From NCBI GenBank assembly GCA_964057225.1, contig OZ059898.1:7750001-7814000 (forward strand): 64,000 bases of DNA, read 5' to 3'. The first letter of the stretch is position 1, and each line of letters opens with the position of its first letter. The notes under the pieces were generated by a model. That model saw nothing but the letters and a program-made list of their open reading frames with translations. It ran no database searches and was not told the DNA's origin. Below, in pieces: positions 23,584 through 30,753 of this stretch. A program made the position numbers and the translations under genes. This DNA comes from Auanema rhodensis. Taxonomy: Eukaryota; Animalia; Nematoda.

Positions 23584-24005
23584 ATGTCTAGAGCACACTT
23601 ATCAACAGGTACATTTCATTATATTATATAGCATAATCAGATATTTTCAGGTCATGTATCTTCTCCTTATTTACGAAGATTTCGCTTGCCTGCATTAGGC
23701 ACATATAGGGGCTATGAAGATCCTCTAAGTCCATCCGATGAACTCGCGAAATTGGATCTAATTACAGCACGCATGGTAACAAAGTTTTTAAATGTTTTAT
23801 ATGAATAACATAATGATGCAGAGTGAGATGGTATGTAATGATAACCAAGGAAATCCTAATAATAATATTCAGAAAATTCAGGAAGATACTTCACATCGGT
23901 AGGATAATAAATTGAAGCTACAATATTAAAAGATTATCTTTCAGGTTGGAATCTATTTCTGTACTCGAATCCATTTTCCACCCAAGAAAACTTTTCGCCA
24001 AGTAG
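23584..24005 (+). CDS. 95-aa protein of unknown function, 4 exons
   Basis: Three ~42-46 nt GT-AG introns splice to an open frame: MSRAHLSTGHVSSPYLRRFRLPALGTYRGYEDPLSPSDELAKLDLITARMSEMVCNDNQG...ESIFHPRKLFAK*. AATAAA at ~24050. Confidence 0.65.
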
Positions 24006-24251
24006 TTTCTTTTCTGGCTGATTGCTTTCTGTGAATATCAGATCTTTTGAATAAAAATCACACGTCGATATAATATTTGAGCTTTCTATTATTTTATGTA
24101 CGAGATCACCGTAATTCCGAAAATAAAGATGTGAATGCGGCTGGCTTGTCGATAAAACTAATAACAGTGAAATATTAAGAAAATATTAGGATTTTTAAAA
24201 TATTTTAAACTATATTTTTTATAACCATTATCATTAATTTCGTCAATTCAA

Positions 24252-24285
24252 ATGTACAGAGAGACATTATGTACAGAGAGACATT
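24252..24285. repeat. Perfect 17-bp tandem duplication ATGTACAGAGAGACATT x2
   Basis: Read directly from the sequence. Confidence 0.9.
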
Positions 24286-24565
24286 ATCTCTTTATATCTC
24301 ACCGATTAAAAATCACAGCATAATTTATAATATAATATTTAAGTTGTTTATCCTTTCTTTGCCTTTTAGTGAGGTGACCTCACTGAGTTCTAAAATGTAC
24401 GCAATAAATTTTCTGTTTTGCGTACATTGCGTGGCAGAAGGAATTTATTTCCTTTTTTTCAATATAACTTTAAAACTCTAAACATACTTGAAACATATAG
24501 TTATTACAGAAGCAACATAATAGCATTGCTCAAAGTAGCTTTGCTTTTGATTGATTAACTAAATT

Positions 24566-24911
24566 ATGCTCTCAGAGCTGATAATTGCTGGAACACTATT
24601 CATCAACGCCTGCGCTGTTCTTAACTTCAAACTGTTCGTTCTTTTTTCTATCACTGTCTAAATAATTCTTATCGAGTCGTTTCACATTTTAGAACCAAAT
24701 CTCAGCACGACTTCACACAGTTCATACCTGAAGGAGAAGCCAGGGCTTTTGGCGATAGAATTAGAGAGTTTCTTGCATCTCTACAGTACTTTCGTGTTTT
24801 CATTGCGCTTTGGAACTTTTTCTTAATTTTTTTGATGTTTGTGTAAGTTTCATATTTTCGAACTTTATATCTGGTGTGCTTTTCTTTCTTTCTAGTTTCT
24901 TCTCTCATTAA
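24566..24911 (+). CDS. SMIM7: Small integral membrane protein 7 (exons 24566-24633, 24693-24842, 24896-24911)
   Basis: [23 protein letters not shown]...[36 protein letters not shown] matches the SMIM7 motifs GTLxxNAxAVLNFKL and IREFLxSLxYFRxFIALWN. Confidence 0.92.
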
Positions 24912-24915
24912 AAAT

Positions 24916-27900
24916 ATGGTATCTGCAACTGAAGCGCCCAATACTTTTGTTGGGGAATCCGATCAATTAAATACCGTAGAGAGTCTTCTAAAAGTTTAAC
25001 TAAATATATGAATGTTTAGTAATATCAATGATTTAAGTTACCCGTAAAAGTTATTCCTTCCGGACGACCTAGAAATTGCTCAACAGTTACTAAAGCTGAA
25101 TCGTATGCTGTTTTTTTCTACCTCGTCTAAAGCCTAATTTTAGGGAAGATGATTTAGATTTTTCTGATCTCCTTAGAGATCTCAGGACAGAATTAGATGT
25201 GAAAAAAAGAGAAGAAGCTAAACTTGAGCAAGAAATTGTTGCTGCACTAGCAGAAGGGAGCGCTGGTATATAAATATGCATATATATCGTTATAATTCAT
25301 TAATACAACAGCTGGGTTTGAACAATCTCGTGCTTTTGCTATGGCTGTTTCTCGACTTAATAACAGTTTACTAGTTGTCGAATCTGATGCAAAACAGCTC
25401 GCTACTAGTCTGTACTCTATATCCCGTTTAGCCGACAATATTAGCGGAAAAGTTTATACAATGCTAAATAATTACTAAAGTTTCTATACTAGGTTTCTGC
25501 TCTTGATGTAGCGAAAACGAGGGTTGTTGAATGTATGCAATTATGTGGAGATATGAAAGATTTGGGTGTCTGTAGTGAGGGTGTTGAAGATGCTATCCGA
25601 TCCGAAGATTTTGAACAAGCAGCTCAACTTATTCATCGATTCCTCACACTTGATAAAGCTGTTTTCCAATTGGGTGAACCATCTGATAAAGGCAATTTAA
25701 GAAAAAGTTATGAACTAATTTTGAACGTCTTAGATGCTGGTCAAACTATCCGCCATAGCTATGAAGTTCTATCTGCGGCTCGAACGCGTTTGAAAGATAT
25801 TCTCGAAAAACGGTTGGATGACGCTATAAACAGAAATGAAGTAGCCGAAATGCAAAGGTAATCTAATTAAGGTTGATTAGTAGATGTCAAATAACCAAAA
25901 TGAATGTATTTATAATCGGCTGTTAAGATATGTAAAACTTTTCCCTCTAATCAATGAGCATGAGAGCGGATTATCTCGCTTTGCTATGTACTTTGGTGGC
26001 ATTATTCGGAAACAAGGAGAGGAAAATATTAAGGTTTCTAATATTAAGCTAATTTGATAAAATATTTTTTCAAGATTATGAGTGCCGGTGGATCAGATGA
26101 TTCCCGATTGAGTGTTTTGTATGCTGATACTCTTTTCCTCTTCCTCGAAAGTAATAGCTCTAATTTATATGAACATGGATTTATTAAAAGTTCTTTAAGA
26201 TGTGGCATCATTGCTGGAAGTAAATCAACCTTTAATTGAAAATGCATATGGCGCAGACAAATTGTTGGATTTCATTATTATGCTTCAAACTGATAATGAT
26301 TTTGTTATCGAAAATATTCTTAGCGCGTTTAATAAGAAGAGACAAATAGATCGATTTGCCAGAAGTGCTCGAAAACTATTACGCGATGGCAAGAATAAAA
26401 CTGGTTTGTAATTATAACTCATAATAAAAAACCTTAATAATTTTTGTAGAACGAATTAACCCACTCGAACTAGACACATTACTTTCCGAGTTATGTTTAA
26501 TGAACACACATGTAGAAATGTATTGGAGATTTGTTAAGCGACGTTTGGGGGAAAAAAACAATGTTCAAGATGATGAAGTTTTAATTTATTGAGATTCTAA
26601 AGTACGTAGAAATTTTAGTTTGTTATGGTTGGAGAAGAACGCGAATTAGAAGAAAGTGCTCGTAAAAAATCTGAGCAAAATGCTATTATTAAAAAAGAAG
26701 AACGCCAAGCCAAATTAGATCAGTTATTACATCGCAGTCTTGTTGGAACAAAGGTTCAAGAGTTGTTAGGACAATATATACTTCTCGAACAGTATTATAT
26801 GGAGGAATCTGTTCGGAAAGCTATCGAAATCGATTCGCGAGAAGAAGGATATACAAGGTAAACTGACCGAGTAAAAATTTTTAAAAAAACTCAACATTCT
26901 TCGTTAGCTCTGCTGTGGAGGATGTAATGTTCATCGCTCGAAAATGCGTTCGAAGAGCTATGACTAGTGGATCTATAGATTGTGTCTGTGCTGCCTTAAA
27001 TAACGCTTGTGCTCTATTAGAAACTTCTTATTATGGATATCTAGAGGAATCCATAAAGGTATGTTAGAGAATATAGCAAACGAATGAATCTTTTTTTATT
27101 TTAAGGTTGGTTATCCTTCCGTTGGCTTTGCAGCCGAAGCATTTCAAACGGCACAAACAGCATACAATGTAATTCAACATGGTATGTAACCATTTAGCTG
27201 TCCAATTTTCTGATGGAATTTTATAGGAAAAACGATGGGCGAAGCTGGTCCTGAAGCTCAGCGAGATGCGTATATAATTTCTATAAATAACTCAAGTCGA
27301 ACAGCTGAACTTGTTGTTCAATTGAAACAAGGATTCGAAACTGAGTTGTCGAAGAAAGAGGTATTTTAGTTACGTTGTCGTAATTCATTTGCTAACAACT
27401 TTAACAGAGAAATCCAGTTGATGCTGCCAAGCTTGAACATTCATTGTCTCAATTAGATGAAGTAGGCAAAAAAATGTCCAATTTGGCTGCTACAGCAGTG
27501 TCAACTCTATGCACAACTATTTTCCGACCCAAAATAAAATCCAGGTATATACATGCATACATACATATATAGCAACGAATACATTTAGTTCGGAATCATA
27601 CGTTGATCTGTCTCATACTCTTACGGAAGCCCAATTTGCTGACTACGAAGGAGTTGATCCCTTCATTGAACACTTTATTGCTTCTATCGATAAGCAGTTA
27701 GCTTATTTCGAGCCAATGTTACAAAACGAAAACTTCCAAGTATGAATTTATATTTATGAATTGAATATGTCCAATTCTTTTTTAGAATTTACTTTTGGAT
27801 GTTTGTGCTGAAATTGCTCATCAAATGGAGCGTGTAATTCTCAAGTGTAATTTCAATAGATTAGGTGGATTGCAACTTGATAAAGAGTTTCGTCATTTAT

Positions 27901-28168
27901 CTGCTTATCTTAGTGGAGTAGCCGGTTGGTCAGCAAGAGAAAAAACTGTTCGTTTAACACAGGTAGCAATGTTTCCACATGAGATTTAAAGTGTTTTGTT
28001 TAGATTGTATCCCTGTTGAATGTCGAATCAGTTGATGAAGCAAAAGAATTATTTGAAGCTGGTCGTGGTAGCATAATGGCTCGATCTTTAACTCCGAGCG
28101 AAATTGAGAAAGTTCTCCTACTTCGAGTTGATTTATCTTCAGCTCAGATTAAGCAACTTCAAATTTGA
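24916..28168 (+). CDS. cogc-4: Conserved oligomeric Golgi complex subunit 4
   Basis: LADNISGKVSALDVAKTRV, EDFEQAAQLIHRFL, QELLGQYILLEQYYMEESVRKAI, FNRLGGLQLDKEFRHLSAYL, LTPSEIEKVLLLRVD. First in-frame ATG at 24916 via 44- and 41-nt introns. Confidence 0.92.
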
Positions 28169-28516
28169 TATTGTTTCATATGTTGGGGATTGGGCTAGTT
28201 TATATCCTGTGATAATTGTTGTGATGGTAGGTAACCATTGTCTGGTAATAATTATTGTGAATCAATAAAACTGAATCATTCTATCCTCCATGTTTTATTC
28301 ATTGTTTTTAATCGGGCTAACATATGGCGTATATGGTACAGTAACATTTAGTAAGAAATTAAAGGGCGGCCACAAAAAGGTCCTGTGAAGAAAAGGCTGT
28401 TTAAAATATTCTTCTGTGTGCACCCGGAATATTCGGTGGACTCGAGATTTCTACGAATAATCTTGTTCATTATTTTCTATAAATCTGATATAATTTATAT
28501 ATATCCTAGGTAAATA

Positions 28517-30753
28517 ATGGCTGGCGCTGGAGAATCGTTACTCGCTCTTACCGGAAAGAGAACAACTGGACAGAGTATTCGCAGCCAGAATGGTAAAATA
28601 TGCTATTTCGAATAATTCTTACTTTGAATCCTCTAAATTATAGTAACTGCCGCTGTAGCTATTGCGAATATCGTAAAATCGTCTCTTGGGCCTGTTGGCT
28701 TAGATAAAATGTTGGTAGATGATGTTGGAGTAAGGACATCTTGTTAGACATTTCATAATTTTTTTCCTCAGGATGTTATTGTGACTAATGATGGAGCTAC
28801 TATTTTGAAGCAATTGGAGGTTGAACACCCAGCCGGTAAAGTTTTGGTAGAATTAGCTCAGCTTCAAGATGAGGAGGTATTTTAAATCAATTCTTATTAC
28901 ATGAAAATTTGTTTTTACTACTTTAATAGGTTGGAGATGGTACCACATCTGTTGTTATTGTTGCCGCTGAACTATTGAAAGCTGCTGATGAACTTGTCAA
29001 GAGCAAACTTCACCCTACTACTGTTATCAACGGATATAGATTAGCTTGCAAAGAAGCCGTAAAATACATGCAGGTAACATAGAAAGAGTTTACTAGTTTA
29101 ACATATCTATAACTATTAGGAGAGTCTTTCCTTCACTGTAGATGAACTTGGAAGAAAGTCACTTATTGGAGCTGCTAAGACCTCAATGAGCAGTAAAATT
29201 ATTGGACCGTTGGTTTCAGTATCATTTATATTTTTGAATTATATATAATAGAGACTCTGATTTCTTTGCTGCCATGTGTATTGATGCCGCTGAAGCTGTA
29301 AAGGTTACGGATTCCACAGGAAAGGTTGTGCTTTTGTAGTATATCCGTGCAAATATTTCTTTGAAGGTTACCTACCCAATCAAAGCTGTTAATGTTTTGA
29401 AGGCTCATGGTAAGAGTGCTCGCGAATCAATTCTCGTTAAGGGTTATGCACTTAACTGTACTGTTGCTTCTCAAGGTCTGCTGGTTTTAACAGGCTTCAA
29501 CTCAATTGTTTTCTTTTTCAGCTATGCCACTTAGAATCCAGAATCCAAAAATAGCCTGTTTGGACTTTTCTCTTCAGAAGGCTAAAATGCATTTAGGTAT
29601 TTCTGTAGTTGTTGAAGATCCAGGCAAGCTTGAAGCCATTCGCAGAGAGTACGCTCGTTTATTATTTATGAATTCTATACGATTCGTTTACAGAGAATTT
29701 GATATTACCAAGAGAAGAATCGAAAAAATTCTTAATGCTGGAGCCAATGTTGTACTCACCACCGGAGGTTCAAAATTACCAGAAAGTGTGAAAATTAATA
29801 TGGTTTTTTAGGTATCGATGATCTGTGCTTGAAACAATTTGTTGAAGCAGGTGCTATGGCAGTTAGAAGATGCAAAAAAGCAGATCTCAAGAGAATTGCC
29901 AAGGCCACTGGAGGTATTTGTGCGACAGCTATTTGTTCTATATTTTGTTTAAAGCTACTTTAACCTCATCTCTTGCAACTCTCGAAGGAGATGAAGCATT
30001 TGATGCTTCTCTTTTGGGATCAGCTGAAGAAATTGCCCAGGAGCGTATCAGTGACGATGAGCTTATCTTCATCAGGGGACCTAAAGCTAGAACTGCCAGC
30101 TCTATCATTCTTAGGTTTGTTATATTTTTGGATTGTGTATTACTTTTTTTTTCCAGAGGAGCCAACGATGTTATGCTTGATGAAATGGAAAGATCTATGC
30201 ATGATGCTCTTTGCGTTATTCGCCGTGTTCTCGAATCCAAGAAACTTGTTGCTGGAGGAGGTGCCGTTGAAGCAGCTCTTAATATCTGGCTTGAGGCCTT
30301 TGCTACAACCTTGGTAAATTATTGCAGATTAGATGAATTTTTAATTGTAGTATGTTTAAGTCATCCCGTGAACAGCTGGCTGTTGCTGAATTTGCTAATG
30401 CTCTTCTGGTTATTCCTAAGACATTGTCAGCTAATGCTGCTAAAGACTCAACTGAGTTGGTTGCCAAATTGAGAGCTTTCCATCACAAGGCTCAAAACAA
30501 CACACAGCTGAAACATTTGAAATGGTATGAATAATTCTCCCTTTTGTACTAAAAATAGTAATACAGGGCTGGCCTTGATCTTGAGAACGGAGAAATTCGA
30601 GATAACAAAGAAGTTGGAGTATTGGAACCACTTCTCAGTAAAGTAAAATCTCTCAAGTTCGCCACCGAAGCTGCTATTACTATCCTCCGAATCGACGACC
30701 TTATCAAGTTGGATAAGCAAGAAGCCAGAGGTGGAGACGAATGTGGAATGTAG
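28517..30753 (+). CDS. cct-1: T-complex protein 1 alpha (CCT1/TCP1)
   Basis: [85 protein letters not shown]. Confidence 0.97.

What the first reader, a model, noticed from the sequence alone, without database searches (positions are those of the whole stretch)
24840..24995. SMIM7 and COG4 share one exon: stop and start 4 nt apart, with a back-up stop built into the splice donor
Seen: SMIM7's last exon starts at acceptor 24895 and ends TAA 24909-24911. The only ATG that opens the COG4 N-terminus is at 24916, in another frame, in the same exon (24896-24993). There is no room for a 3' UTR, poly(A) signal or ~100-nt operon spacer. If intron 24843-24895 is not cis-spliced, SMIM7 reads GTG TAA at the donor and still makes a protein only 4 aa shorter. 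Inference: the acceptor is a switch. Cis-splicing yields a dicistronic SMIM7-COG4 mRNA (SMIM7 as a conserved uORF, COG4 by reinitiation, or an NMD target). SL trans-splicing at the same AG yields monocistronic COG4 with a 20-nt leader. Established: SL1-type/alternative operons and rare dicistronic mRNAs are known in C. elegans; I know of no report for this pair.
Basis: partly seen in the sequence, partly recalled or inferred. Interest (0 to 1): 0.8.

Follow-up and report, generated by a model that had tools for sequence, protein, structure and literature searches.

The report
Worm SMIM7-COG4 two-protein mRNA
In this roundworm the small Golgi membrane protein SMIM7 and the Golgi tethering subunit COG4 are assembled as one spliced mRNA, with stop and start 4 letters apart; the layout is kept from Trichinella to Caenorhabditis, and SMIM7 is kept free of stray start codons, as expected if ribosomes skip it to reach COG4.

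Summary
The SMIM7-like gene (24566-24911, 77 aa, 3 exons) ends at TAA 24909-24911. COG4 starts at ATG 24916, in the same exon (24896-24993).

Spliced cDNA contigs from four runs of one study each run from about 24499 through both reading frames to about 28250-28275.

The same layout, with 1-40 nt between stop and start and no splice acceptor between them, is present in ten nematode sequences. These include Trichinella pseudospiralis, Dirofilaria immitis, Mesorhabditis spiculigera, two Caenorhabditis species and a strongylid. All ten strongylid transcript contigs examined carry both frames; one starts with an SL1 tail and three end in poly(A). The annelid Capitella lacks the linkage.

New evidence: nine nematode SMIM7 frames contain no out-of-frame ATG, where 15.5 are expected by synonymous resampling. 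All 31 codon junctions that could form one avoid it. COG4's ATG always has A at -3. This points to leaky scanning on a true dicistronic mRNA.

The proposed cis/trans-splicing switch is not supported. No spliced leader was seen at 24896, and Caenorhabditis has lost that intron yet keeps a 3-nt spacer. The "back-up stop" is a generic result of a phase-2 GTAAGT donor.

Earlier notes of this scan reported similar pairs elsewhere in this genome.

The parts
24499..24565 (+). 5' leader of the SMIM7-COG4 transcript. It contains no ATG.
   Evidence: cDNA contigs start at 24499 in three runs and at 24508 in one.
24566..24633 (+). SMIM7 exon 1 (start context TAAATT ATG C)
   Evidence: Translation; joint 24633>24693 in 4 runs.
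24693..24842 (+). SMIM7 exon 2
   Evidence: It is 84% identical to P0001, which carries PF27938 SMIM7.
24843..24895 (+). Last SMIM7 intron: 53 nt, phase 2, donor GTAAGT. Read through, it gives GTG TAA.
   Evidence: Joint 24842>24896 in 4 runs. The position and donor are shared with Capitella. The intron is lost in Caenorhabditis.
24896..24993 (+). Shared exon holding the last SMIM7 codons (VFFSH), the stop, a 4-nt spacer and the first 26 COG4 codons
24909..24911 (+). SMIM7 stop TAA. ATTAAA at 24907-24912 overlaps it.
24916..24918 (+). COG4 start codon (context AAAAAT ATG G)
24916..28168 (+). COG4 gene. The first exons are 24916-24993, 25038-25102, 25144-25265, 25312-25451, 25493-25691 and 25734-25857; the stop is TGA 28166-28168.
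   Evidence: Joints. Pfam COG4_N, COG4_m and COG4_C. Open frame; 3' end.
28264..28269 (+). AATAAA poly(A) signal of the transcript
   Evidence: Contigs end at 28245-28275.

Best explanation
SMIM7 (a Yos1-like small Golgi membrane protein) and COG4 form an ancient, true dicistronic gene of nematodes. One promoter gives one spliced, polyadenylated mRNA that carries both reading frames 4 nt apart. Ribosomes that start at the first AUG make SMIM7. Small ribosomal subunits that skip that AUG scan on through about 240 nt that are kept free of out-of-frame AUGs, and start at the COG4 AUG, which sits in a strong context. Some reinitiation after the 7-codon in-frame mini-frame (ATG 24835) or after SMIM7 itself may add to this.

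Shown: the sequence layout; cDNA contigs that carry both frames; conservation across the phylum; AUG depletion. Inferred: that single molecules carry both frames, that both proteins are made from them, and that leaky scanning is the route.
For: 1; in 4 runs, one spliced contig of about 2.86 kb covers 24499-28275 with every intron removed.
2; in a strongylid, all 10 COG4 transcript contigs examined, from 10 runs, include SMIM7 with a 2-nt spacer. One begins with the SL1 tail CCAAGTTTGAG and three end in poly(A).
3; another species' transcript contig has a 19-nt spacer.
4; stop and start lie in one exon in L009 (36 nt), L012 (1), Trichinella pseudospiralis (4), Dirofilaria immitis (15), C. brenneri (3), C. 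remanei (31) and Mesorhabditis spiculigera (40).
5. Capitella SMIM7 is not next to COG4.
6; there are no out-of-frame ATGs in SMIM7 plus spacer in 9 species, against 15.5 expected by synonymous resampling (minimum 6 in 5000 simulations).
7; the same test on COG4 gives observed counts near or slightly above those expected (30/26.5, 33/30.4, 24/23.5), and only 1 of 26 blocks of 231 nt has none.
8; all 31 at-risk codon junctions avoid ATG. All 18 Asn/Asp/His codons before a G use the C-ending codon, although the window's COG4 uses T-ending ones 85% of the time. The sites span codons 8-64.
9. Capitella uses AAT-GCN at the Asn14-Ala junction and so has the ATG there.
10.: -3 is A at 9 of 9 COG4 starts, against A 4, G 2, T 3 at SMIM7 starts.
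11; a dearth of AUGs in the first frame is the published signature of leaky-scanning bicistrons in green algae and in Drosophila stoned and Snapin (PMC11892635).
Against: Contigs are assemblies and cannot prove that one molecule carries both frames. Short spliced-leader or poly(A) branches would be trimmed as tips.

The four runs come from one study.

SMIM7's AUG has a purine at -3 in 6 of 9 species, so it is not clearly weak.

ATTAAA overlaps the stop in five species, and C. remanei has AATAAA in the spacer, so a short SMIM7-only mRNA is possible.

Pristionchus COG4 contigs start with an SL1-like tail 27 nt before the ATG.

The nine species are related, so the ATG statistics are not fully independent.

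No protein or ribosome data were available.
Confidence: 0.68

Rival explanations
1. The acceptor at 24895 is used either in cis (SMIM7 completed, dicistronic RNA) or for spliced-leader trans-splicing, which gives a monocistronic COG4 mRNA with a 20-nt leader as the main source of COG4.
For: The genome has thousands of SL1 genes. The acceptor is the only AG-bounded site in front of the ATG. Pristionchus COG4 contigs begin with GTTTGAG, the SL1 tail, 27 nt before the ATG. Contig assembly would trim a 22-nt leader branch, so its absence is weak evidence.
Against: No leader was seen at 24896 in 4 runs. All 10 strongylid contigs examined are dicistronic. Caenorhabditis lacks the intron yet keeps the tight junction. 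ATG avoidance over the whole SMIM7 frame would not be needed if COG4 came from a leader-capped short mRNA. Trans-splicing there would also discard the SMIM7 part of the transcript.
Confidence: 0.15
2. Two overlapping monocistronic mRNAs. SMIM7 mRNA is cut and polyadenylated about 10-20 nt after ATTAAA (24907-24912). COG4 mRNA starts at an internal promoter within or upstream of SMIM7 exon 2. The assembler merely joins the two.
For: ATTAAA overlaps the stop in the window, L012, the strongylid and both Caenorhabditis species. There is an AATAAA in the C. remanei spacer. By the tool's own caveat, contigs cannot show single molecules.
Against: The hexamer is absent in Trichinella, Dirofilaria, Mesorhabditis and L029. 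ATG avoidance already acts at codons 8-15 of SMIM7, which implies scanning from the 5' end of the SMIM7 frame. Strongylid contigs run from the SL1 tail to poly(A).
Confidence: 0.1
3. Termination-reinitiation only. Ribosomes translate all of SMIM7, stop at TAA and restart 4 nt downstream. Leaky scanning plays no part.
For: The stop and start lie very close, 1-4 nt apart, in five lineages.
Against: The spacer is 15-40 nt in five others. A 77-codon first frame is long for ordinary reinitiation. AUG depletion inside the translated frame would not be selected under this model.
Confidence: 0.07

Closest known systems
Conserved bicistronic loci of green algae translated by leaky scanning (PMC7896298, PMC11892635)
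   Same: One mature mRNA carries a small first protein, often a small membrane protein such as OST4 or TOM22, and a larger second protein after a short spacer. The first frame is poor in AUGs. The pairing is conserved over a very wide phylogenetic range.
   Different: This is an animal that has spliced-leader trans-splicing and operons at its disposal. The pair here is SMIM7-COG4. No translation experiment has been done here.
Drosophila dicistronic genes stoned and Snapin (as cited in PMC11892635)
   Same: The first frame lacks internal AUGs and has a non-consensus start context, and the second frame is reached by leaky scanning.
   Different: The genes differ. Here the stop and the start lie in one exon 1-40 nt apart, and the layout is kept across a whole phylum.
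Nematode SL2-type operons (PMC1657053)
   Same: Same-strand neighbours are transcribed together. The unit's 5' end can carry SL1 (L016).
   Different: There is no spacer of about 100 nt, no upstream poly(A) site followed by a trans-splice acceptor, and no sign of separation into two mRNAs.
SL1-type and 'alternative' operons of C. elegans (from my own knowledge: Williams et al. 1999; Blumenthal, WormBook)
   Same: There is essentially no intercistronic distance.
   Different: In those operons the downstream gene's acceptor abuts the upstream gene's cleavage site. Here the only acceptor lies 13 nt upstream of the SMIM7 stop and is missing altogether in Caenorhabditis.

Membership tests
True dicistronic mRNA read by leaky scanning | One mature mRNA molecule carries both complete reading frames | tested here: inconclusive
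   Spliced contigs span both frames in 4 runs here, in 10 strongylid runs with an SL1 tail and poly(A), and in L029. Contigs are not single molecules.
True dicistronic mRNA read by leaky scanning | The first frame and spacer are depleted of AUGs that would trap scanning ribosomes | tested here: met
   None observed against 15.5 expected in 9 species. The control on COG4 is calibrated. All 31 at-risk junctions avoid ATG.
True dicistronic mRNA read by leaky scanning | The first AUG has a weaker context than the second | tested here: inconclusive
   COG4 has A at -3 in 9 of 9 species. SMIM7 has A 4, G 2, T 3, and A at -1 in only 2 of 9. This is a tendency, not a clear-cut difference.
True dicistronic mRNA read by leaky scanning | Both proteins are made from that mRNA | not testable with these tools
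   This needs ribosome profiling, proteomics or reporters.
SL2-type nematode operon | Upstream poly(A) signal, a spacer of about 100 nt, and a trans-splice acceptor before the downstream ATG | tested here: not met
   The spacer is 4 nt and has no AG. There is no AATAAA between 24449 and 26394 on the + strand.
SL1-type operon | The downstream gene's acceptor lies directly at the upstream gene's 3' cleavage site, after its stop codon | tested here: not met
   The only acceptor (24895) lies before the SMIM7 stop.
Alternative cis/trans-splicing switch | A spliced leader joined at 24896 in some transcripts | tested here: inconclusive
   No loose end at 24896 in 4 runs, but contigs drop short branches. 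The acceptor is absent in Caenorhabditis.
SMIM7 / Yos1-like (PF27938) | About 75 aa, with the motifs NA.AVLNFKL and [17 protein letters not shown] and the C-terminal VFFSH | tested here: met
   The 77-aa model aligns with named SMIM7 proteins of nematodes, molluscs and annelids. The Atlas clusters are SMIM7/Yos1. The local Pfam copy gave no hit for the 50-aa and 87-aa pieces; this may be because the copy lacks the model.
COG4 | COG4_N, COG4_m and COG4_C domains in order | tested here: met
   Exon translations hit PF20663 (3.9e-16), PF08318 (2e-11) and PF20662 (5.2e-15).

The most novel reading that the evidence does not exclude
SMIM7-COG4 is one of a class of ancient true dicistronic genes in nematodes (a small protein first, a larger protein second). 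The class is kept since before the split of Trichinella and Caenorhabditis, escapes spliced-leader resolution, and uses leaky scanning to fix the ratio of two Golgi trafficking proteins. On this reading SMIM7 (Yos1-like) works together with the COG complex.
Probability: 0.45. Interest if true: 0.7.

Novelty: new member of a known kind. Interest (0 to 1): 0.6.

Why it matters
Nematodes are the textbook case of operons that are split into single-gene mRNAs by trans-splicing. A gene pair that stays on one mature mRNA across the whole phylum, with codon choice in the first gene shaped to let ribosomes through, shows that a second way of expressing two genes together works beside the operons.

It gives a clean, testable system: a single synonymous change in SMIM7 should lower COG4.

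It links SMIM7, whose function is unknown and which sits at the trans-Golgi network in mouse neurons (PMC9938882), to the COG tethering complex.

It also explains recurrent annotation errors. SMIM7 is cut to 73 aa in Ancylostoma, Mesorhabditis, Auanema and Onchocerca, fused to COG4 in Trichinella and Dirofilaria, and not called in the C. brenneri record.

Tried and rejected
1. A codon-order shuffle of SMIM7 alone gave weak P values (0.33, 0.075, 0.05). I replaced it with synonymous resampling using each species' COG4 codon usage.

2. I considered another frame and other splice sites for COG4 exon 2 (the 'DDLEIAQQLLKLN' frame). The cDNA joints 24993>25038 and 25102>25144 rule it out.

3. A fusion protein by stop read-through or frameshift is rejected. 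The spacer length modulo 3 differs among species (4, 36, 1, 2, 19, 3, 31, 40, 4, 15 nt).

4. An alternative acceptor inside SMIM7 (the CAG of the Gln codon in SLQYF) is not conserved; C. remanei has CAA.

5. Literature searches for SMIM7 with elegans, cogc-4 with operon, Y51H7C.6, and alternative operons found nothing on this pair. My memory that cogc-4 is Y51H7C.6 is unverified.

6. The bacterial-type promoter and terminator scan is irrelevant and found nothing.

7. The C. elegans locus itself could not be fetched; C. brenneri and C. remanei stand in for it.

Searches used single exons or intact reading frames of fetched transcripts. Exons were joined only inside scripts, for translation and ATG counts.

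Full report
**What is in the window**

Reading 24000-25800 and translating the pieces gives a three-exon gene for a 77-aa protein:
- exon 1 at 24566-24633;
- exon 2 at 24693-24842;
- the first 16 nt of an exon that starts at 24896, with TAA at 24909-24911.

The protein ends in FLMFVFFSH. Four nucleotides later (AAAT), at 24916 and in the +1 frame, an ATG opens a frame that continues through 24993 and further exons into a COG4 protein. Pfam gives COG4_N 3.9e-16, COG4_m 2e-11 and COG4_C 5.2e-15.

The small protein is SMIM7 / Yos1-like:
- Exon 2 is 84% identical to P0001, which carries PF27938 SMIM7.
- The whole model lines up with named SMIM7 proteins of nematodes, molluscs and annelids.
- The ESM Atlas places it with SMIM7/Yos1 clusters.

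The genome is a 181-Mb nematode with several thousand SL1 genes. Its COG4 is 96% identical, over the 46 residues that align, to that of Auanema sp. JU1783.

**Transcript evidence here**

Four public runs of one study hold the stretch as spliced contigs. In each run a single contig of 2.85-2.88 kb starts at 24499 (24508 in one run) and carries the joints 24633>24693, 24842>24896, 24993>25038, 25102>25144 and the later COG4 joints. The contigs end at 28245-28275, just around the AATAAA at 28264.

In the contig's 5' part, up to and including the COG4 start, the only ATGs are the SMIM7 start, one in-frame ATG seven codons before the SMIM7 stop, and the COG4 start. No in-frame COG4 ATG exists in the next two exons. 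The next one would delete about 98 residues, including the conserved motif (V/I)P.GR.

No spliced-leader loose end was reported at 24896. Contigs drop short branches and cannot prove single molecules, so this point stays open.

**Conservation across nematodes**

In every nematode sequence listed below except Pristionchus, the SMIM7 stop and the COG4 start lie in one exon with no acceptor between them.

| Sequence | Spacer (nt) |
|---|---|
| The window | 4 |
| L012, an unnamed relative | 1 |
| A strongylid close to Ancylostoma | 2 |
| Caenorhabditis brenneri | 3 |
| Trichinella pseudospiralis | 4 |
| Dirofilaria immitis | 15 |
| L029, an unnamed transcript | 19 |
| C. remanei | 31 |
| L009, an unnamed relative | 36 |
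| Mesorhabditis spiculigera | 40 |

Further points:
- In the strongylid, all ten COG4 transcript contigs examined, from ten runs, include the SMIM7 frame. One starts with CCAAGTTTGAG, the SL1 tail, in front of the SMIM7 leader. Three end in poly(A) after the COG4 3' UTR.
- The two Caenorhabditis species have lost the last SMIM7 intron.
- In the annelid Capitella teleta the downstream neighbour of SMIM7 is a sulfatase on the other strand, not COG4.
- The one exception is Pristionchus. Its COG4 transcript contigs begin with GTTTGAG (the SL1 tail) 27 nt before the ATG and carry no SMIM7. Where SMIM7 lies in that genus could not be checked.

**The 'back-up stop'**

Reading through a phase-2 intron with a GTAA donor always gives xxG TAA.
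- Both other phase-2 GTAA donors of this COG4 gene do the same, and most retained introns would stop within ten codons.
- The same intron position and the same GTG|TAAGT donor are found in Capitella, where there is no COG4 link.
- L012 has GTATGC at that donor and no such stop.
- The four residues that would be lost belong to a C-terminal tail (VFFSH, with close variants such as VFFGH and VFFAH) that is kept from nematodes to molluscs.

So the 73-aa form is best seen as an annotation artefact. It appears as such in the records of Ancylostoma, Mesorhabditis, Auanema and Onchocerca.

**How COG4 is probably translated**

Across nine nematode species the SMIM7 frame plus spacer contains no out-of-frame ATG.
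- Resampling synonymous codons with each species' own COG4 codon usage predicts 15.5 in total. None of 5000 simulations gave fewer than 6.
- The same test applied to COG4 coding sequence gives observed counts close to, or slightly above, those expected: 30 against 26.5, 33 against 30.4 and 24 against 23.5. Only 1 of 26 blocks of 231 nt is free of them. The test is therefore not biased towards finding avoidance.
- Of 31 codon junctions where a synonymous choice could create an ATG, all 31 avoid it.
- All 18 Asn/Asp/His codons that precede a G use the C-ending codon. Yet the window's COG4 uses T-ending codons 85% of the time, and in 21 of 23 cases before a G.
- These sites run from codon 8 to codon 64, so the constraint covers the whole frame.
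- Capitella, without the linkage, has the ATG at the Asn14-Ala junction.
- The COG4 start has A at -3 in all nine species; the SMIM7 start has A 4, G 2, T 3.

A dearth of AUGs in the first frame together with a good second start site is the published signature of leaky scanning in algal bicistrons and in Drosophila stoned and Snapin. Pure termination-reinitiation would not select for it. It may still contribute, especially after the conserved 7-codon in-frame mini-frame.

The species are related, so the statistics are not fully independent. They do span the deepest split in the phylum.

**Rivals that remain**
- A minor spliced-leader product at 24896 cannot be excluded from contigs.
- ATTAAA overlaps the SMIM7 stop in five species, and C. 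remanei has AATAAA in its spacer. A short SMIM7-only mRNA cut inside the first COG4 codons is therefore possible.

Neither changes the main reading.

**Comparison with known systems and novelty**

The unit fails the defining features of SL2-type and SL1-type operons. It fits the class of true dicistronic mRNAs read by leaky scanning.

I found no paper on this pair. The C. remanei record lists the two as separate neighbouring genes. Earlier notes of this scan report other small-protein-first pairs in this genome: TMEM242-PIGL, prefoldin-like-ALG1 and LYRM1-EEF2KMT. I did not test those.

Mouse SMIM7 sits at the trans-Golgi network and has no known function. A fixed coupling to a COG subunit is therefore a functional lead.

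I rate this a new member of a known kind, of moderate to good interest.

Noticed in passing
window 25692-25733: A GC-AG intron in COG4 (donor GCAATT), supported by the cDNA joint 25689>25732, which can shift by 2 nt.
   Followed up: partly
window 28510-28900: A highly expressed CCT/TCP-1 chaperonin gene starts at ATG 28518, about 230 nt after the COG4 poly(A) signal on the same strand. A Cpn60_TCP1 gene also lies downstream of COG4 in Mesorhabditis spiculigera (L018). This may be operon-like synteny.
   Followed up: no
G000:C3:6741531-6766485 and C3:14134320 onward: SL1 genes stand in long tandem arrays of about 252-bp and about 341-bp units. There are 3673 matches to the 22-nt SL1 in the genome.
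   Followed up: no
L013 5001-7590 (Trichinella pseudospiralis KRX97831.1); L014 5001-11645 (Dirofilaria immitis MCP9261524.1): The public gene models fuse SMIM7 exons to COG4 by skipping the SMIM7 stop. These are probably annotation artefacts of the dicistronic layout.
   Followed up: partly
L014 5540-5575: Dirofilaria SMIM7 reads ...IISLCLC instead of ...IIFLMFV, as if one T were missing from a T run. This is either an assembly error or a real frameshift.
   Followed up: no
L022, L024, L028, bases 1-30: Strongylid SMIM7-COG4 contigs join two different upstream sequences at the same acceptor that takes SL1 in L016. These are either alternative first exons or upstream operon genes.
   Followed up: no
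L009 5944-5964; L012 56-73: In two relatives a 6-codon upstream frame (MIGDAL*, MHYAL*) overlaps the SMIM7 start codon. It would further divert ribosomes past SMIM7. The window has none.
   Followed up: no
L019 1-31, L020 1-25 (Pristionchus transcripts): The COG4 mRNA starts with the SL1 tail followed by TGAGG..., which resembles the stop plus spacer of L029. The leader may be spliced right at the old SMIM7 stop.
   Followed up: no
L009 5176-5481: A TPD52 gene lies upstream of SMIM7 in this relative. In the window the upstream transcript ends near 24135; I did not identify it.
   Followed up: no
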